NCBI RefSeq assembly: GCF_963921235.1
Contig: NC_086101.1
Location: 14,694,001-14,758,000, forward strand
Reading direction: 5' to 3'
DNA length: 64,000 nt
From: Mobula hypostoma
Taxonomy: Eukaryota
Below, one piece after another: positions 14,520 to 62,870 of the stretch. The notes below the pieces were generated by a model, which did no database searches, was not told the origin of the DNA, and was given only the letters and a program-made list of their open reading frames with translations. Both the position numbers and the translations under genes were made by a program. Each line of letters opens with the position of its first letter. Position 1 is the first letter of the stretch.

Positions 14520-14562
14520 ATGACGTGGTATGAGTTCGTATGTTTATTGCTGTTGTTCTCTG
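14520..14562 (+). CDS. NCR3-like: Gene A exon: signal peptide MTWYEFVCLLLLFS(G); exon including UTR is 14506-14562
   Basis: Acceptor cttctctttttctatag|G at 14506, ATG at 14520, hydrophobic core, and donor G|gtaag at 14563. It ends in phase 1, matching the phase-1 start of the V exon and giving ...LLFSG-AARANG. Confidence 0.85.
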
Positions 14563-14567
14563 GTAAG

Positions 14568-14985
14568 NNNNNNNNNNNNNNNNNNNNNNNNNNNNNNNNN
14601 NNNNNNNNNNNNNNNNNNNNNNNNNNNNNNNNNNNNNNNNNNNNNNNNNNNNNNNNNNNNNNNNNNNNNNNNNNNNNNNNNNNNNNNNNNNNNNNNNNNN
14701 NNNNNNNNNNNNNNNNNNNNNNNNNNNNNNNNNNNNNNNNNNNNNNNNNNNNNNNNNNNNNNNNNNNNNNNNNNNNNNNNNNNNNNNNNNNNNNNNNNNN
14801 NNNNNNNNNNNNNNNNNNNNNNNNNNNNNNNNNNNNNNNNNNNNNNNNNNNNNNNNNNNNNNNNNNNNNNNNNNNNNNNNNNNNNNNNNNNNNNNNNNNN
14901 NNNNNNNNNNNNNNNNNNNNNNNNNNNNNNNNNNNNNNNNNNNNNNNNNNNNNNNNNNNNNNNNNNNNNNNNNNNNNNNNNNNNN
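14568..14985. other. Assembly gap (N run) starting 5 nt after the leader donor
   Basis: Seen directly. Confidence 0.99.
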
Positions 14986-17323: not shown

Positions 17324-17665
17324 GAGCTGCCAGAGCTAACGGAATAAGCCACCAATGGCCGGAGCGGATCACGGTTACTGAAGGGGGCACGGCGCAGCTG
17401 AATTGTGCTTACATCAGTAATATAAACGTTACAAAGAAGTGGGTCGGATCCCTTACCTGGTACAAAGACGAGGAAAACGGTACCGTTTGCAACAAGTGCA
17501 GTGGGTTTCATGGTCGCGTAACGACTAACAGTTCACAAGGCTTTCTTAACCAAACTTTACAAATCGTCAACGTCAGAATGAACGATACAGGAAAGTATTA
17601 CTGCAAAGTACAAATTTTCGACAAGGGAAGTTATCTTGGCAAAGGGACAGAGGTTCAAGTCACAA
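17324..17665 (+). CDS. NCR3-like: Gene A exon: VJ-type IgSF V domain, NKp30/NCR3-like
   Basis: ttacag|GA ... ACA A|gtaagt, 342 nt, phase 1-1. Has the B-strand Cys (AQLNC), C-strand Trp (GSLTWYKDE), DTGKYYC and a germline-joined G strand (LGKGTEVQV). Motifs parallel human NKp30 as I recall it (IGSVTWFRDE, FRGRL, SSRFL, GNGTRLVV). Five N-glycan sequons. Confidence 0.93.
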
Positions 17666-25769: not shown

Positions 25770-26600
25770 GTATATTGGCTGGCTGTATCACAGTCTGATA
25801 TGAAAACACCAATGCCCTTCAAAGCCCTTCAAAATCCTACAATAATTTTTGCATACGGCCCAGTCCATCACAGATAAAGCCCTCCCCACTATTAAGCACA
25901 TCTACACGAAGCTTTGTCGCAGAAAACCAGCATCCACCATCAAGGACCCCCGCTAGCTAGGTTATGCTCTCTTCTCCCTGCTGCCATCGGGAATGAGGGA
26001 CGTGAGCCTCAGGACTCACAACACCATGTTTTGCAACCCCTCATCCTTCCGGTTCTTGAACCAAAGTGGATATCTTCATTCAGCTTTACTTGCCCCATCA
26101 TTGAAAACTTCTCACAACCTATGTACTCACTTCTGGGGACTCTTTATCTTATGTTCTCGATATTTATTGCTAGTTTATTATTATTTTAATTGTTGTTATT
26201 ATTATTATTATTATTTCTTCCTTTCTTTTTGCATTTGCACAATTTGTTGTCTTTTTCACACTGGTTGAAAGCCAATTTGGTGGGGTCTATTGTTAATTCT
26301 ATTATAGTTGTTATTCATCATCTATTTATTAAATATGCCCACAATAAAGTGAATCACATGATTATATACGGCTACACTTTAAATTACTCTACAACACGTT
26401 CTCTATATTATTGATTTACTTATTTATTATTATTAGTCTTTTTTGTACTTGTACAGTTTGTCTTCTGTTGCACTTCGGTTGTTTGACAGTCTTTATGTGT
26501 TGCTATTCATTTATTATATTGTATGACTTTGTTCTACTGCAAATGCCAGCAAGAAAATGAAACTCTGCGTAAAATATGGTGACATGTACATACTTTGATA
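25770..26600 (+). mobile_element. Rex1/Babar-like 3' fragment with AT-rich tail
   Basis: ggctgtatcacagtctg..cagtccatcaca..gccctccccact resembles the 3' end of the element at 4985-5900. Confidence 0.55.
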
Positions 26601-27457: not shown

Positions 27458-27586
27458 TGGTTGCTGAATTGTTTCCGAACGAAAGGAAAATCGTTTTGTA
27501 TGTGTCTCCACTCCTGGTTTCTGTGCTCCTCGCCCTGGCGCTGATCATCATCATCATTTACAGGAAACGTTGTGCCCGATCGACAG
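27458..27586 (+). CDS. NCR3-like: Gene A exon: short stalk plus uncharged transmembrane helix, (M)VAELFPNERKIVLYVSPLLVSVLLALALIIIIIYRKRCARST
   Basis: Branch point ctaac at 27429, acceptor catcag|TG, donor G|gtaatt, 129 nt, phase 1-1. About 24 hydrophobic residues followed by RKR stop-transfer residues. Confidence 0.88.
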
Positions 27587-31643: not shown

Positions 31644-32510
31644 GTACGTGGGGGAATAATATTAATATCATCGAACACCAGATGTAAAGTTCTCATTGCT
31701 AAATGTCCGTCAGTTTGGTCAATAACAGAAGAACGCCCGTATTTTATGCAAAAGTTTATTCAAGAAAATGAAATGTATTATACGAATTCTGTATATTGCA
31801 CGAATCTGAAGCTGAAAAAACACGGATTTTGTTTTATAAAATATTAGCACACTTTTCGCCTATTTGTTTGCCCCTAAAAAATGACTATAGATTTTGAGAG
31901 GGTTCTTAAAGGGAGGTAAGAGGAGTATTGGTTCTGATCGTGGAGGAAGAGAAAGAAATACAGCAGGTAGAAAATGTGTAACCCCCCCCCCCCCACACAC
32001 ACACACACACTAATTGTCTTAATGTCAAATTTAATTAATCTTAGGATTAGCAATTATCGAATTCGAGAGTCGGTTTCAATATTTTATTTGTTAATGCGAA
32101 TACTTCGTGCAAAGCGTCATACTGACACTGAAAAATAGTTTAATTTTATAAAGGTTCAGATACGTTAACGACGAAGTATATTTTGCTCTCATAGTTAGGG
32201 AACTAGGATTTAATTTTTTCTCATTTTATTTGTGCATTCGGTTAAAAAAATCATTTGTTTGAAATGTTTTATAGATAAAGAATCCACAACCCAAGCTGTA
32301 CCTAAGGTACGTATCTTATTAAAATTAAAGTTTTTGATCACGTTTTTCCTCTGTGATTACTTGCCATTGTATGTGAGAATTATTGAGGTATAAACAGAGA
32401 TAGTTGTTGTTTTAGAATAATCCAAGCTCCTTGGCTCCAGACACATCAAATTAAGACACTGTACCTGTTAACTTGGTGTTTGATAAAAAGCAATATATTT
32501 ACTGTTCTAG

Positions 32511-43726: not shown

Positions 43727-43969
43727 AAAGAGAAATCTGTAGTCTATGCTGAAATAAATATGAGGAAAGCGCCACGGACTCGACCATTGGACTACGTTGC
43801 ATGCGAGTCAGGCCGGACTGGACGGAGTTCCCAAGCGGGAAAAAGGGAAGATCCGATTCTCTACGCCGAGGTGAGAGCTGCATCGCCTAGAAATGATTGG
43901 GCGTCAACGAAGCCCACGAAGTCTCCCAGAAGAGAGGAGCAGATCGTGTATGCGGCCGTGAATGTGTAG
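43727..43969 (+). CDS. NCR3-like: Gene A terminal coding exon with three ITIMs (VVYAEI, ILYAEV, IVYAAV)
   Basis: Acceptor gtctgttccattccag|AAA, phase 0, 80 codons then TAG. The three [IV]xYxx[IV] motifs are at 43739-56, 43856-73 and 43943-60. Non-repetitive sequence. Confidence 0.85.
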   Translation, partial: KEKSVVYAEINMRKAPRTRPLDYVACESGRTGRSSQAGKREDPILYAEVRAASPRNDWASTKPTKSPRREEQIVYAAVNV

Positions 43970-44967
43970 CGTATGTGAGGCAGCCTTCTTTACTTTGACA
44001 GCAATAGATCCTGCAGGCCCAGCAAGCCAGCGGAGTCCAATTATACCCACGTCACCAATTAACCTATTAAACCGCAGGAATGTTGAAGGAAACCGGAGCA
44101 ACCGGAGGAAACCCATATCGCCACAGGCACGTCGTACAATCTCCTTACTGATTACTGCGGGAATCACATCCGTGTCGCTGGTGCTGCAATGGCATTAAGC
44201 TAGCCGCTACGCTACCATGCCGCCCATCAGTTTCTTGAACCGGCAGGGATATGAACATTGGGGAAGGATTCCTGTAGTTGGGCGAATTCACTGCGCCCTA
44301 AGCGCCGATTACCGTATTGTATCTCTAAGTAAAATATAACAAGTAAAATTTATCGTATTTGCCATTCTAAACGGCGTATCTGATATCCACGACCCCTGGT
44401 TCCATACTTTCCAGCTCTCAGTTGCATTGCTGTATAAAACTACTTTTAAGCTGTTAGCATTTTATCTCCAGTCTCATATCATAGTCATGAGTTACAACAA
44501 TATCCGAGATGATTCTCGTCGCAATTATGATTCTCAATCCGGGAAACAAGATTATATTCAAGGTTGTAGGTGCCTGTATTTATTCTTTGAAGTTTGCCTG
44601 GTCATCTGGCGGTTTTGTAAGGCTATTGCAGGTAGCGTTGTCAAGGGTGCTGCTTCCTAATGTTGGAGTTATGAATCAGCTAGAATTTTATAGGTTTCGC
44701 TTATATTTCCCTGGTGTCGTTTTTCAAGTTCAAATTCAAATTTATTGTTATCCAATTTCGCACATGTATACTTCTACGCAAAACAAAGTTCCTCTGGGAC
44801 CACAGTGAAAAACACAGTACAGATATCACATACAGCGCATAAATGGTATTAGCACAACAATGTTAAGAGATTAAAAGTATCCTGTAGATGCACAAGTTGC
44901 GTCGGAGCGCTGCACTCCTGCTTTACAATTCCAAACCCACTTTCGGAGATTGTACCAGCATGAGATT

Positions 44968-47877: not shown

Positions 47878-50800
47878 TTGTCCATATAGGTACCAATGAC
47901 ATAGGTAGGAAAAGGGATGAGGTCCTGAAAGGAGAATATAGGGAGCTAGGAAGGGAGTTGAGAAAAAGGACCGCAAAGGTAGTAATCTCGGGATTACTGC
48001 CTGTGCCACGCGACAGTGAGAGTAGGAATGCGATGAGGTGGAGGATAAATGCGTGGCTGAGGGATTGGAGCAGGGGGCAGGGATTCAAGTTTTTGGATAA
48101 TTGGGACCTCTTTTGGCGCAGGCGTGACCTGTACAAAAAGGACGGGTTACACTTGAATCCTAGGGGGACTAATATCCTGGCAGGGAGATTAGCGGGGGCT
48201 ACTGAGGTGACTTTAAACTAGAATGGTTGGGGGGTGGGAATCAAATTAAAGAAGCTAGGCGTGAGGAGGTTAGTTCACAACAGAGGGAAGGGAACCAGTG
48301 CAGAGAGACAGAGGGGTGTAAAGTGAGCGTAGAAGCAAAAAGTACAAAGGAGAAAAGTAAAAGTGGCAGGCCGACAAATCCAGGGCAAGCATTAAAAAGG
48401 GCCACTTTTCAACATAATTGTACAAGGGCTAAGAGAGTTGTAAAAGAGCGCCTGAAGGCTTTATGTGCCAATGCAAGGAGCATTCGTAATAAGGTGGATG
48501 AATTGAAAGTGCAGATTGTTATTAATGATTATGATATAGTTGGGATCACAGAGACATGGCTCCAGGGTGACCAGGGATGGGAGCTCAACGTTCAGGGATA
48601 TTCAATATTCAGGAGGGATAGACATGAAGGAAGGGGAGGTGGGGTGGCGTTGCTGGTTAAAAAAGAGATTAACGCAATAGAAAGGAAGGACATAAGCCGG
48701 GAAGATGTGGAATCGATATGGGTAGAGCTCCGTAACACTAAGGGGCAGAAGACGCTGGTGGGAGTTGTGTACAGGCCACCTAACAGTAGTAGTGAGGTCG
48801 GAGATGGTATTAAACAGGAAATTAGAAATGTGTGCAATAAAGGAACAGCAGTTATAATGGGTGACTTCAATCTACATGTAGACTGGGTGAACCAAATTGA
48901 TAAAGGTGCTGAGGAAGAGGATTTCTTGGAATGTATGCAGGATGGTTTTTTGAACCAACATGTCGAGGAACCAACTAGAGAGCAGGATATTCTGGACTGG
49001 GTTTTGAGCAATGAGGAAGGGTTAATTAGCGATCTTGTCGTGAGAGGCCCCTTGGGTAAGAGTGACCATAATATGGTGGAATTCTTCATTAACATGGAGA
49101 GTGAGATAGTTAATTCAGAAACAAAGGTTCTGAACTTAAAGAGGGGTAACTTTGAAGGTATGAGACGTGAATTAGCTAAGATAGACTGGCAAATGACACT
49201 TCAAGGATTGACGGTGGATATGCAATGGCAAGCATTTAAAGGTTGCATGGATGAACTACAACAATTGTTCATCCCAGTTTGGCAAAAGAATAAATCAAGG
49301 AAGGTAGTGCACCCGTGGCTGACAAGAGAAATTTGGGATCGTATCAATTCCAAAGAAGTAGCATACAAATTAGCCAGAGAAAGTGGCTCACCGGAGGACT
49401 GGGAGAAATTCAGAGTTCAGCAGAGGAGGACAAAGGGCTTAATTAGGAAGGGGAAAAAAGATTATGAGAGAAAACTGGCAATGAACATAAAAACTGACTG
49501 TAAAAGCTTTTATAGATATGTAAAAAGGAAAAGACTGGTAAAGACAAATGTAGGTCCCCTGCAGACAGAAACAGGTGAATTGATTATGGGGAGCAAGGAC
49601 ATGGCAGACCAATTGAATAATTACTTTGGTTCTGTCTTCACTAAGGAGGACATAAATAATCTTCCAGAAATAGTAAGGGACAGAGGGTCGAGTGAGATGG
49701 AGGAACTGAGTGAAATACATGTTAGTAGGGAAGTGGTGTTAGGTAAATTGAAGGGATTGAAGGCAGATAAATCCCCAGGGCCAGATGGTCTGCATCCTAG
49801 AGTGCTTAAGGAAGTAGCCCAAGAAATAGTGGATGCATTAGTGATAATTTTTCAAAACTCGTTAGATTCTGGACTAGTTCCTGAGGATTGGAGGGTGGCT
49901 AATGTAACCCCACTTTTTAAAAAAGGAGGGAGAGAGAAACCGGGGAATTATAGGCCGGTTAGCCTAACGTCGGTGGTGGGGAAACTGCTGGAGTCAGTTA
50001 TCAAGGATGTGATAACAGCACATTTGGAAAGCGGTGAAATGATCGGACAAAGTCAGCATGGATTTGTGAAAGGAAAATCATGTCTGACGAATCTCATAGA
50101 ATTTTTTGAGGATGTAACTAGTAGAGTGGATAGGGGAGAACCAGTGGATGTGGTATATTTGGATTTTCAAAAGGCTTTTGACAAGGTCCCACACAGGAGA
50201 TTAGTGTGCAAACTTAAAGCACACGGTATTGGGGGTAAGGTATTGGTGTGGGTGGAGAATTGGTTAGCAGACAGGAAGCAAAGAGTGGGAATAAACGGGA
50301 CCTTTTCAGAATGGCAGGCGGTGACTAGTGGGGTACCGCAAGGCTCAGTGCTGGGACCCCAGTTGTTTACAATATATATTAATGACTTGGATGAGGGAAT
50401 TAAATGCAGCATCTCCAAGTTTGCGGATGACACGAAGCTGGGTGGCAGTGTTAGCAGTGAGGAGGATGCTAAGAGGATGCAGGGTGACTTGGATAGGTTG
50501 GGTGAGTGGGCAAACTCATGGCAGATGCATTTTAATGTGGATAAATGTGAAGTTATCCACTTTGGTGGCAAAAATAGGAAAACAGATTATTATCTGAATG
50601 GTCGCCGATTAGGAAAAGGGGAGGTGCAACGAGACCTGGGTGTCATTATACACCAGTCATTGAAAGTGGGCATGCAGGTACAGCAGGCGGTGAAAAAGGC
50701 GAACGGTATGCTGGCATTTATAGCGAGAGGATTCGAGTACAGGAGCAGGGAGGTACTACTGCAGTTGTACAAGGCCTTGGTGAGACCACACCTGGAGTAT

Positions 50801-51353
50801 TGTGTGCAGTTTTGGGTCCCCTAATCTGAGGAAAGACATCTTTGCCATAGAGGGAGTACAAAGAAGGTTCACCAGATTGATTCCTGGGATGGCAGGTCTT
50901 TCATATGATGAAAGACTGGATGAACTGGGCTTGTACTCGTTGGAATTTAGAAGATTGAGGGGGGATCTGATTGAAACGTATAAGATCCTAAAGGGATTGG
51001 ACAGACTAGATGCGGGAAGATTGTTCCCGATGTTGGGGAGGTCCAGAACGAGGGGTCACAGTTTGAGGATAGAGGGGAAGCCTTTTAGGACCGAGATTAG
51101 GAAAAACATCTTCACACAGAGAGTGGTGAATCTGTGGAATTCTCTGCCACAGCAAACTGTTGAGGCCAGTTCATTGGCTATGCTTAAGAGGGAGTTAGGT
51201 ATGGCCCTTGTGGCTACAGGGGTCAGGGGGTATGGAGGGAAGGCTGGGTTCTGAGTTGGATGATCAACCATGATCATAATAAATGGCGGTGCAGGCTCGA
51301 AGGGCAGAATGGCCTACTCCTGCACCTATTTTCTATGTTTCTGTGTTTCTATG
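47878..51353 (+). mobile_element. Near-intact young CR1, 5'-truncated in ORF1, inserted into the host CR1
   Basis: ORF1 end (VHIGTND...LN*), then an 865-codon ORF2 frame and a ctatgttt tail. A gtcc microhomology lies at the 5' junction. Confidence 0.95.
48206..51254 (+). pseudogene. CR1 ORF2: APE endonuclease plus reverse transcriptase, with a single +1 insertion at about 50815
   Basis: NARS, ITETW, GDFN, SDH, QHGF, PQGSVLGP and FADD motifs. TTT TGG GTC CCC TAA occurs where WSPN is expected, and the frame resumes at 50802-51254. Confidence 0.9.
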
Positions 51354-55922: not shown

Positions 55923-57534
55923 CAGTGGCATGCAAAAGTTTGGGCCCCTGGTCAAATTTTCTGTTACTGTGAATAGTTAAGTGAGTAGAAGATGAACTGA
56001 TCTCCAAAAGTCAAAAAGTAAAAGATGAAACATTCTTTTCAACATTTTAAGCATGATTAGTGTATTATTTTTGTTTTGTACAATTTTAGAGTGAAAAAAG
56101 GAAAGGCGCACCATGCAAAGGTTTGGGCACTCCAAGAGATTTGAGCTCTCAGATAACTTTTACCAAGGTCTCAGACCTTAATTAGCTTGTTAGGGCTTTG
56201 GCTTGTTCACATCAATCGTTAGGAAAGGCCAGGTGATGCAAATTTCAAAGCTTTATAAATACCCTGACTCCTCTAACCTTGTCCCAAAAATCAGCAGCCA
56301 TGGGCTCCTCTAAACAGCTGCCTAGAACTCTGAAAATTAAAATAAATGATGCCCACAAAGCAGGAGAAGGCTATAAGAAGACAGCAAAGCGTTTTCAGGT
56401 AGCCGTTTCCTCAATTCGTAATGTAATTAAGAAATGGCAGTTAACAGGAACGGTGGAAGTCAAGTTGAGGTCTGGAAGACCAAGAAAACTTTCCGAGAGA
56501 ACTGCTCGTAGGATTGCTAGAAAGTTAAATTAAAACCCCCGTTTGACTGCAAAAGACCTTCCGGAAAATTTAGCAGACTCTGGAGTGGTGGCGCACTGTT
56601 CTACTGTGCAGCGACACCTGCACAAATATGACCTTCATGGAAGAGTTATCAGAAGAAAACCTTTCCTGCGTCGTTACCACAAAATTCATCGTCAGAAGTT
56701 TGCAAAGGAACATCTAAACATGCCTGATGCATTTTGGAGACAAGTCCTGTGGACTAATGAAGTTGAAATAGAACTTTTTGGCCGCAATGAGCAGAGGTAT
56801 GTTTGGAGAGAAAAGGTGCATAATTTCATGAAAAGAACACCTCTCCAACTGTTAAACACGGGGGTGGATTTATCATGCTTTGGGCTTGTGTTGCAGCCAG
56901 TGGCACGGGTAACATTTCACTCGTAGAGGGAAGAATGAATTCAATTAAATACCAGCAAATTCTGGAAGCAAACATCACACCATCTGTAAAAAAATGAAAA
57001 GGGGATGGTTTCTACAGCACGATAATGATCCTAAACACACCTCGAAATCCATAATGGACTACCCCAAGAGGCGCAAGCTGAAGGTTTTGCCATGGTCCTT
57101 ACAGTCCCCCGACCTAAACATAATCGAGAATCTGTGGATAGACCTCAAAAGAGCAGTGCATGCAAGACGGCTGAAGAATCTTACAGAACTAGAAGCTTTT
57201 TGCAAGGAAGAATGGGCGAAAGTCCCCCAAATAAGAATTGAAAGTCTCTTAGCTGGCTACAGGAAGTGTTTACAAGCTGCGATACTTGCCAAAGGGGGTG
57301 TTCCTAAGTACAGACCTTGCAGGTTGCCCAAACTTTTCTTCGGACCCTTTTCCTTTCTTGTTATTTTGAAACTGTAAAAGATGGAAATAAAAAAATTAGT
57401 CTTGATTAAAATATTAAAGAAATGTGTCATCTTTAACTTTATCCCTTTTGGAAATCAGGTCATCTTTTACTCGCTTAGTTATTCGCAGTAGCAGAAATTT
57501 TGACTAGGGGTGCCCAAACTTTTGCATGCCACTG
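55923..57534 (+). mobile_element. Full-length Tc1/mariner DNA transposon (IR/DR type) with TA TSD and a decayed transposase at about 56300-57313
   Basis: TA|CAGTGGCATGCAAAAGTTTGGGC ... GCCCAAACTTTTGCATGCCACTG|TA, with about 210-bp imperfect TIRs that carry an inner copy of AAAGTTTGGGC. GRPRK, VLWTNE, QHDNDPKH and SPDLNIIENLW motifs; stop at 56531 and frameshifts. Confidence 0.95.
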
Positions 57535-59474
57535 TATGTATGCAATTATGAGATGGCCAAAAAAGATAGACTGGAAGCCTGCATTTCCTAAGCAACTGAA
57601 TAAGTATCTGCCAGAATTGAATAGCGTCATGGGCACGAAAAGTACAGTGAAGTTGCTAATATTATTAAGCCAAATAGTCAGGGGTGTTGGGCGGGTGTGC
57701 TGATAAAGAATTCGCTGACAGAAAGGATAGTAGAATCAAATACCACCATTCTATTTATGAAGCAGTTAATGGGCACTTGCAAAGGAGTAACCTCTCAGTA
57801 TTCAGACTGGATTGTAATATTCATCTCAACATCACCTTTCCGCCCAGCATTTTTATAACGAGTGAAATTATATTAACCTGCACCGACTGCTTTATTAGAC
57901 TCTATGAGCTGGAATCAGAACTCCACATAAGGAATAAAGATAGGCAGGTATGGCTCGTGATTGAACATAGTGACAATGAATGAGAAATAATCTATCAGAT
58001 AATGTATTAATGAATTTCGGATGTTGCCTTAAGTTTTAGTCTCTTATCCTATTACAAATGTGAGTAATATTCTATTTTTCACAATGAAGTTGCATTTTAT
58101 TTCTGCAATTTTGTTATTCTCCGCCACACTTATAGAATGCCTATATGTTTTTTTCATGAAAATTGAGCAATGATGACATTTGATTTCATAACAGGACAAT
58201 TTAAGCCAGAAAACCAGACGTTTCCAACATCCCCGATTCAGGTTTAAATACAATCAAAGCATTTCCCTCGCTATCAAATATAATCCTGTGTTGTAAGCAC
58301 TGGCGCTGCCTGCCCTATTGAATGTAGTCAGCATTTCTTTTTCTTTATTATTTCATTTCCAGCATCTGTGTCATTTTTATTCAAAATAGCTGATCAAAAA
58401 GCCGTGCTAAATTTCCATGCTTTTGTAATTCCAGATGGAGCAAGGTAATGCATAGTGAACTCCATCTTCTCATTTCTGTGAATACTAATATCTAAACAAG
58501 TTGAATATTTCCCTCAATCCTCCTGAAAACCCCAAGAGCATAAGATATTAACGTATCAATAGGTCATATGGCCCTTCGTACTTATTCCATCATAATTGAT
58601 CGGTTACCACTTTCATAAACAGCATTTGATCGTGAAAATAACTATAATATGATCAGAGATTACATTAGATTGGAACTTAGGAGAATATTTCTCTTTAAAG
58701 CGAAATTTGTTAAGTAAGCAGACATTCTCAATACGTTTATATTTTGAATGCCCATTTAAATTTTAGTGCTACATACTCATTCGTGCGAAATGTGTAGATT
58801 CAATTAGCGTTTTAGGGGTAAGGCTAATCAATGGCTTTTTCTGTTCGTTTTCCGATTATCTGTCACGGTTTTTGTTTGTCACCGTCCGTCGAAACATTTC
58901 TTCCACAAGAAAAGGAAGAGTTTGATTTGAGTATCTTGGCTGAACAACTACCAATAGCCATAATGGATCAGACAGGCAAAGCAGGATTTTCAAATTTATT
59001 ATCTGTTCAATTTTTCAGTAAAATGTCTTAAATAATTATTACCAAGACATAAACACCATTAACTGCAAAGCACCCCTAAGATATGTTTCTCGAGAATTGT
59101 TTGTGACACACGAAACTGCGGAGCAGAGTAGATCTTAGCATCTTTAGCTAGAACCTGTGAATCTCTGGAGCTTATTGGCACAGACAGTGGTGGCGGCCCA
59201 TTCATTGAGTTTATTTAAAACAGAGGTTGATAGGATCTTGATTAGTAAGAGCGGCAAAGGTTACGGGGAGAAGACAGGAGAATGGTGTTGAGAGGGATAA
59301 TAAATCAGCCATGATCGAATGGCGGAGCAGACTCCATAGGCCGATTGGCCTAATTGTACTGCTATGTCTTTTGGTTTTATTGTATTAATTGACCAGAATA
59401 GACTTCTGTATTGAACTATTAAACGTTGCGCACAACTATTACTTTTAAATCCTGCGCCAAATGCAGACTTCTAT

Positions 59475-59662
59475 TCATGTCGGTAATTTTTTAAACTGTG
59501 TTTCCATGAATACTTGCCTGTTGGCTAGGTTTGTTGCTATGAGAGCTCTAGATGTCCCCCAGGTGCAGATGCCGAAAACTGTTACAATGTTGATCAAAGC
59601 AAACACTGCAAGTTTCAGTCCTATTTCAGTCAGCTGCCAACGCAAGCTCCTTGGGTTCCGAG
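59475..59662 (-). CDS. NCR3-like: Gene B exon: stalk, TM with Lys and short tail, (P)RNPRSLRWQLTEIGLKLAVFALINIVTVFGICTWGTSRALIATNLANRQVFMETQFKKLPT*
   Basis: Strong minus-strand acceptor gatttatttttattctcaac-ag|CT at 59663/59662, phase 1 and in frame with the V exon. The hydrophobic helix contains K (59613-15) and N. Stop TGA at 59477-59475 and AATAAA on minus at 59381-59376. Not in the ORF track because it has no upstream start codon. Confidence 0.85.
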
Positions 59663-62528
59663 CTGTTGAGAATAAAAATAAATCACATTCACCAACAAAT
59701 CACGTCCAAGTCCTATCGATTTCATCTCGGTTTTGTGCATGGAAATGTTGCTTGTTTTGGTTTAAATAGACAGGTACTATCATCGCTAACTATTATGGAG
59801 GCCTAGCAGTGCAGCTAGAGGAGATGCTGTGTCACAGTTCCAGCAGCGGGTGTTCAATCCTCGTTTTGGTGACGTCAGTGCGGAGTTCGCACGTTCTTTT
59901 TGTTACTGCCTGGCTTTGCTCCGGGTGCTTCATTTTCCACCCTGACCTTGACAAATGACATCTATTAATCACTCTTTCTCTGTAGTGGAGTTGATGGAAA
60001 TGTGAAGAAAGTAGGTTACAGAGAGAAGCTGGTATGGAAATTGATTGCTCTTTTAAAAGGCTTAGACTTGCATCAAATGTTTTCGGTCTCTGTGTAAAAG
60101 TATCATTTTGCCTTGTTTTCCTTTATAATTTGCTAATCCCATGCAAAGTGGAATAAGTTATTTCTCCAGTTTGATACGATTTGACTTCTACAATTGTATT
60201 ATAATTTTATTCGTGAATATCGAGTCCTTTTGATATTTAACTGAATAAGCATGGCGACTGAATGTTTACTTTTTAAAGTTTTCAGTCAATTTACCATTCA
60301 AGTGTTCAACACAATGGAGGCAACTTGTACGCAGTGAAATAAAGACAATCGTCATGAAGGCCTTCGCTGATTTGGTTATACCGTTATGTGGTCACGTGCC
60401 ATCTAATATCGTGAGATATCCACATTCCGCCATTGATTTGCTCATCTCTTATCAAACTATCTTTCATTTTTCGATTTATCTGTCTCTTTCTACTCTGTGA
60501 GGATTAACCGTTAATAATATTCCTGATCTACAGATTTCTCAGCGAACGGTCAATCGGCAGCTGCATCCCTGAATTCTGTTAAATTGGTTGATTGAATTTG
60601 TAGGCGACCTGTCTTTCACAGAAAGGAGTTATGGCTGGTGGAGAGTGCCATGAATTGTGGTAGGATGCATCTATACCAAATATAGAAACGTTTAGAGTCC
60701 TAATACACGGCCTCAACCCACACCATCCACTATGTCTACACAAATGCTGCCTATCCCTGTAACTTCCTCCAGCAGTTTGTTTTTGTTAAAGTATACCGTT
60801 CCCAAATCACCACCTTAACGAATTGGACCTATTGAGATATTGATATACACTTGCGCACGGGGTGGATGTAACGCTTTATTGTAACGTTTAATTTACAATT
60901 TTGTTCCATTTGGGCAGCAGCTATTCATTCCGGATCATATATGGGGTTTGACTTTCCGCAGTAGAATGGGTTTGAGAGGGATAATCAATTAGCTACGATG
61001 CAATGGTGAAGGATTAATTCTCTTACTATGCCTTATTGACTTACAGTTTAAGTCTGTTTTTCGCGCAGCGGGGTTGAAAACAACAATAAAGCAAATAAAT
61101 CTCTTACTAGCCCTTCCTTCAGTTAGTCCTGACGAAGAGTCTCGGCCCGAAACGTCGACTGTACCTCTTCCTAGAGATGCTGCCTGGCCTGCTGCGTTCA
61201 CCAGCAACTTTGATGTGTGTTGCATAAAGCAAAATTAACCTGACATGAAAGTCTTAAATTTTGCACCATGTAGCAATTTATTTCCTTCATATTAAACTGT
61301 CCGAAAGTAAATTGTTCAACTACCGGGGTGAAATTCAACCCACTGGATCTACTTTAATGGCCTTGGAAATCTAGCCCACAAGTAACAATTATCATAATGG
61401 TTTTATGATTCCCTGGCGCCCTTCCTCTTTAGTCAGCATCTTCGCCACCAATTCATTGTCTCACGTTTGTGATTTTGATCAGTTGCTTTCAAATGCTTTC
61501 CAAACAGTGGTTGAGAAGGCATTGTCCTTACAAGTCGGGGCATTGAGCTCAAAAGTCAGTAAGCTGTGTTGTAACTTCACAAAACTCTAGTTAGGCCGCA
61601 TCTGGAGTATCCCAGACAGGTCTGTTTGCCCGATTATGGTAAGGACGTTGAGGCTTTGGAAATGGTGTACGAGAGATATCCCGGAATTCCGGTATGAAGT
61701 CATAGAAAAGTACAGCACAGAAACAGGCCATTCCGCCCGTGTCGACATATTTAATAGGCCTACTCCCATCAAGCTGCGCCAGTCCATTGCCCTCCAGAAC
61801 CCTACCATCCGAACTTCACTTAAACGTTGGAATCGAGCTTATATGCACCACTTGTGCTAGTAACTCGTTCTACACTTTCCTGGTCCTCATGTTTCCCTTA
61901 TATTCCCCTTAAATATTTCACCTTTCACCATGCTTGCAGTTACCCTATTCACCCTGATTACCCTATCTGCGACGCCATTTTCAACTAAATATGGATATTG
62001 TTTGACTTAGACTAGGATATCTGGAACAACGAGAGGCTGGAAAATCTGTGCTGTGTTCTCTGGAGCGATGAAGGCTAAGGCGAGATCTGATACAGATTTA
62101 TAAAAGGCATTGATTGCCAGATGGCCTAATTCTGTTCCTACATCTTATGGTCTTATAGTCATATATTCCAAAGCTCTGACGCTTAAATACGATTTTTTGA
62201 TGAGGGTGGTAAAACACTGAACGTGAAGGTAAGATAATGCAAACTTCTGCCCGTTTCCAAGATAATGCTGAGCAATCCCGGCATTTTCTTCTGTTTGCTT
62301 ATTTGATTTCTTTCTGGTGGTGTGTGACTGATTCTGGGAATTAACTTGATTATGTCGATTGCAATGTTAATTTACCTTTCACTATTTTATCAACATGTAA
62401 TTCACCATCACTATGTCAATGATATTCATAATTTCTTTGTCTAAATTTGCACTGAGGTACACTTTATTGCAGAAGTTGAGAAATACGCATAGAACGTCGA
62501 AGATAAATGCAATATAAGACTAACTTAC

Positions 62529-62870
62529 GTATGACTGTAACTTGTGTCCCTTTTCCAAGATAAACTCCCCTCCCGAGAAGATGTGCTCTGCAGTAATACT
62601 TCCCTGTATCGTTCTTTCTGACGTCGACGAGTTGTACAGATTGGCTTAAAATGCCCATTGAACTGTTGGTCCTTACGCGACCATGAAACCCGCGGCACCA
62701 GTTGCAAACGGTACGGTTTTCCTCGTCTTTGTACCAGGCGATGGCTCCGATCATCTTCCTTGTATCGTTTATTTTACTGATATAACTACAATTCAGCTGC
62801 GCCGTGCCCCCTTCAGTAACCGTGATTTGCTCTGGCGATTGTTTGATTACTCCGTTAGTTCTTGTAGATC
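62529..62870 (-). CDS. NCR3-like: Gene B exon: VJ-type IgSF V domain, paralog of the gene A V exon
   Basis: Minus-strand ttacag|GA ... ATA C|gtaagt, 342 nt, phase 1-1 and open. 74 of 114 aa identical to the gene A V domain by manual alignment. Confidence 0.93.

What the first reader, a model, noticed from the sequence alone, without database searches (positions are those of the whole stretch)
43727..43969. Three ITIMs on an NKp30-like V receptor (gene A)
VVYAEI, ILYAEV and IVYAAV share a YA[EA][IV] core, which suggests internal motif duplication. A fourth, non-canonical Tyr (LDYVAC) is present, and the last ITIM sits two residues from the C-terminus. With the uncharged TM this predicts SHP-1/SHP-2 recruitment, the opposite signalling sign to mammalian NKp30. 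Juxtamembrane cysteines (RKRC, HSCC) could be palmitoylated.
Basis: partly seen in the sequence, partly recalled or inferred. Interest (0 to 1): 0.72.

Follow-up and report, generated by a model that had tools for sequence, protein, structure and literature searches.

The report
Inhibitory tail of ray NKp30-like receptor
This stretch is the last coding exon of a devil-ray immune-receptor gene related to human NKp30, and it encodes a tail with three inhibitory (ITIM) tyrosine motifs; the gene is real but already modelled in RefSeq and belongs to a known shark and ray family.

Summary
Confirmed. Window 43727-43969 (+) is the last coding exon of gene A. It starts after a good splice acceptor, in phase 0, and ends at a TAG stop. 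It encodes 80 residues with three canonical ITIMs (VVYAEI, ILYAEV, IVYAAV) and the extra tyrosine in LDYVAC.

The exon cannot be spliced in frame to the transmembrane (TM) exon directly. The five-exon product is letter-for-letter the RefSeq protein of Mobula hypostoma named "TIGIT-like isoform X1" (262 aa). That name is misleading: by sequence and by predicted fold the V domain is closest to NKp30/NCR3.

Relatives in manta, two stingrays, sawfish, a skate and a bambooshark have the same tail. The two distal motifs, with tyrosines 26-30 residues apart, are conserved. The first is an ITIM only here and in the skate, and is YxxM in the closest relatives. "HSCC" is not in the product.

A 95%-identical V domain sits on a charged-TM paralog, so this is the inhibitory half of a paired-receptor set. 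SHP-1/2 recruitment is inferred, not shown.

The scan has already noted other NCR3-like genes with ITIM tails elsewhere in this genome. This is a new member of a known kind, of modest interest.

The parts
14520..14562 (+). Gene A exon 1: ATG and leader (MTWYEFVCLLLLFS + 1 nt), phase 1 donor gtaag. An assembly gap (N, 14568-14985) follows in intron 1 and was left untouched.
17324..17665 (+). Gene A exon 2: single-exon VJ-type V domain with J-like motif YLGKGTEVQVT and five N-glycan sequons. Phase 1 in, phase 1 out.
25916..25993 (+). Relic of an optional Cys-rich stalk exon (…SSPCCH…) with two in-frame stops. It is skipped in the RefSeq model and is not part of the product.
   Evidence: intact in stingray isoforms P0003, P0004
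27458..27586 (+). Gene A exon 3: short stalk, uncharged TM helix (IVLYVSPLLVSVLLALALIIIIIY) and juxtamembrane RKRCARST. Phase 1 in, phase 1 out.
32275..32306 (+). Gene A exon 4: 32-nt mini-exon (D)KESTTQAVPK with acceptor ttttatag and donor gtacgt. It turns phase 1 into phase 0 and is needed to read the tail exon in the ITIM frame.
43727..43969 (+). Gene A exon 5 (the finding): 80-codon cytoplasmic tail plus TAG stop.
43739..43756 (+). Proximal motif VVYAEI (Y189): canonical ITIM here and in the skate, YxxM in M. birostris and the stingrays.
43787..43804 (+). LDYVAC (Y205): non-canonical tyrosine. The D-Y-[AV]-x-C-[EQ]-S block is conserved in mantas, stingrays and sawfish, and absent in the skate.
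43856..43873 (+). ITIM ILYAEV (Y228): canonical in every ray, sawfish and skate relative examined.
43943..43960 (+). ITIM IVYAAV (Y257), 29 residues after Y228. It is the most conserved block of the tail (K-x-P-R-R…Q-x-V-Y-A-x-V-N) and is also present in the bambooshark.
43967..43969 (+). TAG stop where orthologs have a Gln codon followed by R-M-stop. 'cgt atg tga' still follows in frame, so the tail is 3 residues shorter here.

Best explanation
Window 43727-43969 is the terminal coding exon of a five-exon gene (14520-43969, + strand) of the lesser devil ray, Mobula hypostoma. The gene encodes a 262-residue type I membrane receptor of the elasmobranch NKp30/NCR3-like family. Its parts are a leader, one germline-joined VJ-type V domain, a very short stalk, an uncharged TM helix and a 91-residue disordered tail.

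The tail carries a conserved distal ITIM pair (Y228 and Y257, 29 residues apart). It also has a membrane-proximal tyrosine motif (Y189) that is a third canonical ITIM in this species.

The most likely mechanism is inferred by analogy with KIR, SIRP-alpha, PILR-alpha and PD-1-type receptors. Ligand engagement next to an activating receptor would let Src-family kinases phosphorylate the tail tyrosines. The distal pair would then dock the tandem SH2 domains of SHP-1/SHP-2 (possibly also SHIP). These phosphatases would damp signals from activating paralogs that have near-identical V domains but a charged TM.

Shown here: the gene structure, reading frame, motifs, conservation, V-domain affinity to NKp30 and the paired-receptor arrangement. 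Inferred: expression of this exact isoform, phosphorylation, phosphatase recruitment and the inhibitory sign.
For: Gene model:
- All five exons have canonical AG/GT sites and matching phases. The spliced CDS (789 nt) translates to exactly P0007, and skipping the TM exon gives exactly P0008.
- P0007 is on record in assembly GCA_963921235.1 with a gene span of 29,450 bp, the same as 14520-43969.

Tail homologs:
- An exhaustive HMMER search with the 80-residue tail found only two cluster representatives. Both are receptors with the same V and TM parts: a Hemitrygon protein (76% identity, E 5.6e-23) and a Rhinoraja protein (E 8e-05).
- Word-seeded and profile searches added Mobula birostris, Hypanus, Pristis ('NCR3-like') and Chiloscyllium proteins.

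Conservation:
- Y189, Y228 and Y257 are invariant.
- The distal pair is canonical in nearly all relatives. The Y-Y spacing is 26-30 residues, and the -2 residue is always hydrophobic: I/V, once F.
- Between Mobula and the stingrays the tail (72-76% identity) is more conserved than the V domain (62-66%).
- An unused exon of the same gene (the stalk relic) has acquired two stops in 26 codons, whereas the tail exon is intact.
- The batoid and shark tails are collinear and significantly similar (E 8e-13 and 1e-05).

Structure and family:
- The AlphaFold model has a confident V domain, a TM helix at 135-168 and a tail with pLDDT near 30, i.e. disordered.
- NKp30 is the top natural match by sequence (E 1.5e-08, against TIGIT at 1.5e-04) and by fold.
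- Paralog P0013 has an identical leader and a V domain 94.7% identical, with a charged TM and a short tail.
Against: - The RefSeq models are computational predictions.
- No orthologous DNA could be fetched, so no dN/dS could be computed.
- The proximal motif is not a conserved ITIM.
- YAEI, YAEV and YAAV also fit the YxxΦ sorting signal.
- The gene shows some erosion in this species: a dead stalk exon, a stalk 6 residues shorter than in M. birostris, and a stop three codons early.
- Phosphorylation and phosphatase binding are untested.
Confidence: 0.82

Rival explanations
1. The tail exon is stranded. Gene A transcripts end after the TM exon, where read-through of the donor at 27586 adds about 33 codons before a stop. 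The ITIM exon would then be a relic joined to the gene only by gene-prediction software.
For: 16 kb of LINE-rich intron separates the TM and tail exons. No RNA could be examined. An open frame continues past the TM-exon donor.
Against: The mini-exon and the tail exon are intact, with canonical sites and fitting phases. The same five-exon layout, including the 32-nt mini-exon, is modelled in six species. The tail is more conserved than the V domain. A truly unused exon of the same gene has decayed.
Confidence: 0.06
2. The tail is expressed, but its tyrosine motifs work mainly as something other than SHP-recruiting ITIMs. They could be YxxΦ endocytosis or sorting signals, or a mixed 'switch' tail. 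In the closest relatives the proximal motif is YxxM, the kind that binds PI3K p85, and in the bambooshark it is TxYxxL, an ITSM.
For: All three motifs fit YxxΦ. The proximal motif reads YAEM or YTEM in M. birostris, Hemitrygon and Hypanus, and TIYAKL in Chiloscyllium.
Against: The hydrophobic residue at -2, which ITIM/SH2 binding needs and YxxΦ sorting does not, is kept at both distal motifs in all nine proteins. Their 26-30 residue spacing is also kept. Acidic residues precede each tyrosine, as in kinase substrates. The pairing with a charged-TM twin is the classic inhibitory/activating layout.
Confidence: 0.1
3. The gene is a TIGIT orthologue, as its RefSeq name says.
For: RefSeq names P0007 'T-cell immunoreceptor with Ig and ITIM domains-like'. 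TIGIT V domains match weakly (E 1.5e-04).
Against: NKp30 scores four orders of magnitude better by sequence. NKp30 takes the first three ranks in the PDB fold search and the first five in Swiss-Prot, and TIGIT is absent from the rows listed. The V domain lacks the PVR-family signature motifs. It has a J-like GxGT motif. Orthologs and paralogs are named NCR3-like.
Confidence: 0.02

Closest known systems
Mammalian NKp30 (NCR3)
   Same: It has a single germline-joined VJ-type V domain encoded by one exon, followed by a stalk/TM exon. NKp30 is the best natural match by sequence (E 1.5e-08) and by predicted fold (28-31% identity, TM by target 0.75-0.77; NCR3 of five mammals on top).
   Different: The TM has no Arg or other charge, so no CD3-zeta/FcR-gamma pairing is expected. 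The tail is 91 residues with three ITIMs instead of a short motif-free tail. The predicted signalling sign is opposite. The ligand is unknown.
Elasmobranch NCR3 family (nurse shark, eight subtypes; Kinlein et al. 2021, Immunogenetics 73:333, cited in PMC10450919 and PMC12227049; the paper itself was not held, so its content is from my memory of the abstract)
   Same: It is a multigene family of divergent, non-rearranging VJ-type receptors in sharks and rays, said to be MHC-linked. RefSeq names several of this gene's relatives 'NCR3-like'.
   Different: I could not check whether that paper describes this ITIM tail. No nurse-shark sequence was recovered in my searches.
Xenopus MHC-linked V-type IgSF genes (Ohta et al. 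2006, J Immunol 176:3674; from memory of the abstract, paper not held)
   Same: These are NKp30-related V genes, and some carry ITIMs in their tails. An inhibitory NKp30-family member is therefore not without precedent.
   Different: They belong to a different vertebrate class. Homology of the tails was not tested here.
Paired inhibitory/activating IgSF receptors (KIR2DL/KIR2DS, PILR-alpha/beta, SIRP-alpha/beta)
   Same: Near-identical ectodomains (94.7% between P0007 and P0013) are attached either to an uncharged TM with a tandem-ITIM tail or to a charged TM with a short tail. The ITIM tyrosines lie about 30 residues apart, as in KIR (the KIR spacing is from established knowledge).
   Different: The ectodomain is a VJ-type V domain of the NKp30 lineage. 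The activating twin's TM carries both an E and a K (…WQLLEMGVKL…). The adaptor is unknown.
TIGIT (the RefSeq name of this protein)
   Same: It has one V-set domain, an uncharged TM and an ITIM-bearing tail.
   Different: It has no PVR-family V signature, a weaker match than NKp30, and three tyrosine motifs of a different arrangement.

Membership tests
NKp30/NCR3 family | Single V domain of the VJ type (J-like GxGT motif in the G strand) encoded by one exon | tested here: met
   Exon 17324-17665 encodes the whole domain and ends …YLGKGTEVQVT. Pfam V-set E 1.5e-10.
NKp30/NCR3 family | V domain closer to NKp30 than to other V-set receptors | tested here: met
   PDB sequence search: NKp30 E 1.5e-08 against TIGIT 1.5e-04. 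Foldseek PDB ranks 1-3 are NKp30. Swiss-Prot ranks 1-5 are NCR3. No phylogeny was made.
NKp30/NCR3 family | Positively charged TM residue for CD3-zeta/FcR-gamma association (mammalian NKp30) | tested here: not met
   TM IVLYVSPLLVSVLLALALIIIIIY has no D/E/K/R/H.
NKp30/NCR3 family | Short cytoplasmic tail without signalling motifs | tested here: not met
   The tail is 91 residues with three ITIMs.
NKp30/NCR3 family | Linkage to the MHC | not tested
   No MHC marker was seen in this window. An unchecked note (s1-144335) places DDR1 next to NCR3-like genes 1.4 Mb away.
NKp30/NCR3 family | Binds B7H6 | not testable with these tools
   Needs a binding assay.
ITIM-bearing inhibitory IgSF receptors | Type I membrane protein with an uncharged TM | tested here: met
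   Leader, V domain and TM helix 135-168 in the model.
ITIM-bearing inhibitory IgSF receptors | One or more [S/I/V/L]xYxx[I/V/L] motifs in the cytoplasmic tail, conserved in orthologs | tested here: met
   Three are present here. The two distal ones are conserved across rays, sawfish and skate, and the last also in a shark.
ITIM-bearing inhibitory IgSF receptors | Tandem motifs spaced so that the two SH2 domains of SHP-1/2 can bind (about 25-31 residues) | tested here: met
   Y228-Y257 is 29 residues; the spacing is 26-30 in eight relatives.
ITIM-bearing inhibitory IgSF receptors | Tyrosine phosphorylation and recruitment of SHP-1/SHP-2/SHIP, with inhibition of activation | not testable with these tools
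   Needs biochemistry and cell assays.
Paired receptor set | An activating counterpart with a near-identical ectodomain, a charged TM and a short tail | tested here: met
   P0013 (same species) has a 15/15 identical leader and a V domain 107/113 identical, with TM …WQLLEMGVKLIIFLVINIV…. Its gene lies outside this window.
TIGIT | PVR-family V-domain signature motifs (V/I)(S/T)Q, AX6G, T(F/Y)P | tested here: not met
   None is in the V domain. The single AX6G match is in the tail.

The most novel reading that the evidence does not exclude
The three-tyrosine tail, made of a variable proximal motif plus a fixed distal ITIM pair ending the protein, may mark an inhibitory branch of the NKp30 family that predates the shark-ray split. 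It would be kept side by side with charged-TM twins that carry almost the same V domain. If so, the ancestral NKp30 system was a paired inhibitory/activating one, and mammals kept only the activating arm. In Mobula hypostoma the proximal YxxM has in addition become a third ITIM through a single ATG-to-ATA change. This reading may not yet be described in the literature.
Probability: 0.3. Interest if true: 0.5.

Novelty: new member of a known kind. Interest (0 to 1): 0.3.

Why it matters
NKp30 is regarded as the one natural-killer receptor traceable across jawed vertebrates, and in mammals it is activating. A ray member with the same V domain type but a conserved tandem-ITIM tail, paired with a near-identical charged-TM twin, shows that the family works in both signalling directions in cartilaginous fish. 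This gives a concrete pair for testing how inhibitory/activating pairing arose.

Practically, it shows that the RefSeq name 'TIGIT-like' is misleading. It also shows that a 32-nt mini-exon is essential to the reading frame. The gene itself is already in public annotation and the family is known, so the gain is incremental.

Tried and rejected
- **Direct TM-to-tail splice:** rejected. It is out of frame and stops after 8 codons.
- **'HSCC' as part of the protein:** rejected. The two HSCC strings in the window (15424 and 31571) lie outside the exons.
- **Orthologous DNA for dN/dS:** The look-up of encoding contigs gave no record or no DNA for P0006, P0007, P0009 and P0020.
- **Search for nurse-shark relatives with the bambooshark protein:** found only itself.
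- **Papers:** Kinlein 2021, Flajnik 2012 and Ohta & Flajnik 2015 are not held. Searches for 'NS344823', 'XMIV' and 'NKp30 + cartilaginous fish + ITIM + transmembrane' found nothing relevant.
- **Recent internal duplication of the motifs:** no support from codon usage.
- **Pfam match of the tail to SIT (SHP2-interacting adaptor):** E 0.12, below threshold, so not used.
- **ESM Atlas feature search:** it only repeated 'NCR3-like', PD-1 and BTLA look-alikes, which are leads and not evidence.

Full report
**Observation.** The + strand at 43727-43969 is an open frame of 80 codons. It follows a pyrimidine-rich acceptor (…ctgttccattccag) and ends in TAG. It contains VVYAEI (43739-43756), LDYVAC (43787-43804), ILYAEV (43856-43873) and IVYAAV (43943-43960). 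The last motif is followed only by N-V. All three named motifs fit the ITIM consensus [S/I/V/L]xYxx[I/V/L].

By counting alone the cluster is only moderately unlikely. The six-frame translation of the window has 280 matches in 127,996 codons, so about 0.18 are expected per 80 residues. That amounts to roughly one three-motif cluster per window by chance. Shuffling the tail's own residues reaches three motifs in 16 of 200,000 trials. Homology, not counting, shows the feature is real.

**Gene model.** A pattern scan found a VJ-type V exon near 17.3-17.7 kb and a TM exon with RKRC near 27.5 kb on the same strand. It also found a second V exon on the minus strand near 62.6 kb.

Reading the splice sites showed that the V exon and the TM exon both end in phase 1, whereas the tail exon must be entered in phase 0. 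A direct TM-to-tail splice therefore gives a stop after 8 codons.

An exhaustive HMMER search of 1.84 billion representative proteins with the 80-residue tail gave just two hits. One is a 270-aa Hemitrygon akajei protein (76% identity over the whole tail, E 5.6e-23). The other is a 180-aa Rhinoraja longicauda fragment (E 8e-05). Both carry the same kind of V domain and TM before the tail.

Mapping the Hemitrygon protein back onto the window by tblastn recovered three further pieces:
- the leader exon (14520-14562, just before an assembly gap that I left alone);
- the V, TM and tail exons already seen;
- a 32-nt mini-exon at 32275-32306, which encodes (D)KESTTQAVPK, has acceptor ttttatag and donor gtacgt, and converts phase 1 to phase 0.

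The five exons splice to 789 nt. Their translation is identical to P0007, the RefSeq protein 'T-cell immunoreceptor with Ig and ITIM domains-like isoform X1' of Mobula hypostoma. Omitting the TM exon gives exactly P0008, isoform X2. P0007 is on record in assembly GCA_963921235.1 with a gene span of 29,450 bp, exactly 14520-43969.

So the window comes from the lesser devil ray, and the gene is already modelled in public annotation. These are computed models.

**What the protein is.** Pfam sees one V-set domain at residues 27-128. Among solved structures, the best natural match by sequence is human NKp30 (E 1.5e-08 over residues 25-127), while TIGIT scores E 1.5e-04.

An AlphaFold model built on 15 family members has a confident V domain, a TM helix at 135-168 and a tail at pLDDT about 30, i.e. 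disordered. Foldseek places NKp30 structures at ranks 1-3 in the PDB (28-31% identity, TM by target 0.75-0.77). In Swiss-Prot it places NCR3 of rat, macaques, human and chimpanzee at ranks 1-5, ahead of CD79b, MPZL1, PILR-alpha, VISTA and PD-1. TIGIT is not among the rows listed.

The V domain ends in the J-like YLGKGTEVQVT and lacks the PVR-family signature of TIGIT. RefSeq calls the sawfish ortholog and several paralogs 'natural cytotoxicity triggering receptor 3-like'.

As a member of the NKp30 family in the mammalian sense, it fails two features. The TM has no charged residue, and the tail is long and motif-rich.

**Conservation of the tail.** Full-length relatives with the same tail exist in six other species: Mobula birostris, Hemitrygon akajei, Hypanus sabinus, Pristis pectinata, Rhinoraja longicauda (fragment) and, more distantly, the bambooshark Chiloscyllium plagiosum. 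A second, divergent gene with this tail is present in M. hypostoma and in Hypanus.

- In the six-protein alignment, Y189, Y228 and Y257 are invariant. The C-terminal block K-x-P-R-R…Q-x-V-Y-A-x-V-N is the best conserved part of the tail.
- The second motif is canonical in all eight ray, sawfish and skate proteins. It reads VVYSAP in the shark.
- The last motif is canonical in eight of nine proteins, with F at -2 in Hemitrygon.
- The tyrosine-to-tyrosine distance is 26-30 residues throughout.
- The first motif is different. It is an ITIM only in M. hypostoma (…YAEI) and the skate (…YADL). It is YxxM in M. birostris and both stingrays, TxYxxL in the shark, and lost in the sawfish (…YANP) and in the divergent paralogs. 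In M. hypostoma the third ITIM thus rests on one ATA codon where the closest relatives have Met.
- Between Mobula and the stingrays the tail is 72-76% identical against 62-66% for the V domain. This is the usual pattern of a fast-evolving ectodomain on a constrained signalling tail.
- The tails of skate and shark (E 8e-13) and of Mobula and shark (E 1e-05) align collinearly through all three tyrosines. The layout therefore predates the shark-ray split.

**Internal control.** Between the V and TM exons, at 25916-25993, lies a relic of a Cys-rich stalk exon (…SSPCCH…). It is intact and optionally used in the stingray proteins P0003 and P0004. Here it carries two in-frame stops and is skipped. 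An unused exon of this gene thus decays, whereas the mini-exon and the tail exon are intact.

It would be extracellular, so it is not a palmitoylation site. Only C167 in RKRC remains as a candidate. That cysteine is present in the mantas, the stingrays and the skate, but not in the sawfish or the shark.

**Internal duplication.** The neighbourhoods of the three tyrosines resemble each other ([KR]-E-x-x-[IV]-[VL]-Y-A-[EA]-[IV]) more than shuffles do: 7 to 49 of 5000 shuffles score as high. However, only 4 of 15 shared residues use the same codon. With an arrangement this old, ancient duplication and convergence on kinase and SH2 preferences cannot be told apart.

**Paired-receptor context.**
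- P0013, another M. hypostoma protein of 180 aa, has the same leader (15/15) and a V domain 107/113 identical to gene A. It continues into …WQLLEMGVKLIIFLVINIV…, a TM with E and K, and a short tail. Its TM exon is not in this window.
- Gene B, on the minus strand of the window (V 62533-62870, TM exon 59520-59657), is of the same charged-TM type. Its V domain is 67% identical to gene A.
- Gene A is therefore the inhibitory-type member of a paired set, as in KIR, PILR or SIRP.

**Mechanism (inferred).** Ligand binding by the V domain would bring the receptor next to activating receptors. Src-family kinases would phosphorylate the tail. The distal pair, 29 residues apart, would bind the tandem SH2 domains of SHP-1/SHP-2, which then dephosphorylate proximal signalling components. 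The proximal motif may add a third docking site in this species.

Points in favour of the ITIM reading are the strict hydrophobic residue at -2, the fixed spacing and the acidic residues before each tyrosine. The motifs also fit YxxΦ sorting signals, and the YxxM/ITSM variants in relatives leave room for a mixed or switch-like tail. Nothing here shows phosphorylation or phosphatase binding.

**Species-specific details.** The stop codon TAG replaces the Gln codon of the orthologs' …NVQRM ending, and 'cgt atg tga' still follows in frame. The tail is therefore three residues shorter but keeps the last ITIM whole. The stalk is also 6 residues shorter than in M. birostris.

**What is known.**
- The elasmobranch NCR3 family was described in the nurse shark by Kinlein et al. 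2021 (cited in PMC10450919 and PMC12227049).
- ITIM-bearing, MHC-linked, NKp30-related V genes were reported in Xenopus by Ohta et al. 2006.
- I recall both from their abstracts only, because the papers were not held.
- Full-text searches found no paper describing this tail.
- Earlier notes of this scan record many NCR3-like genes, some with ITIM tails, elsewhere in this genome.

**Verdict.** The feature is a further member of a known receptor family that public annotation already models, so its interest is modest.

Noticed in passing
window 25916-25993 (+): Dead stalk exon of gene A (…NQHPPSRTPAS*VMLSSPCCHRE*…), homologous to the optional Cys-Cys stalk exon of the stingray orthologs. It has two in-frame stops. 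Mobula gene A therefore has an unusually short, cysteine-free stalk.
   Followed up: partly
window 43967-43975 (+): The stop TAG stands where the orthologs have a Gln codon. The ancestral R-M-stop still follows in frame, so this is a 3-residue C-terminal truncation specific to M. hypostoma.
   Followed up: partly
window 57338-62870 (-): Gene B is an NCR3-like gene of the charged-TM (activating) type, lying tail-to-tail with gene A. Its TM exon (59520-59657) is 46/46 identical in protein to M. birostris P0016, far better conserved than its V exon (94%).
   Followed up: partly
outside the window (protein P0013, M. hypostoma): A charged-TM twin of gene A with an identical leader and a 94.7% identical V domain. 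Its locus was not located. A first-reader note (s1-143106) mentions a related chimeric gene 8 kb upstream of the window.
   Followed up: no
gene A isoform X2 (P0008): exons 1, 2, 4, 5: RefSeq models a TM-less isoform in which the V exon is spliced to the mini-exon in frame. If real, it would be a secreted V domain carrying the 'cytoplasmic' tail.
   Followed up: no
Hypanus sabinus protein P0005 (not in the window): Isoform X1 carries an insert, …GGIDGFVAKFAKDTK…, that looks like an exonised fragment of a LINE reverse transcriptase, placed between the TM and the mini-exon.
   Followed up: no
window 33-42 kb and 45-51 kb: The introns and the downstream flank of gene A are filled with LINE (reverse transcriptase) fragments in both orientations, including an 865-aa open frame at 48227-50824.
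   Followed up: no
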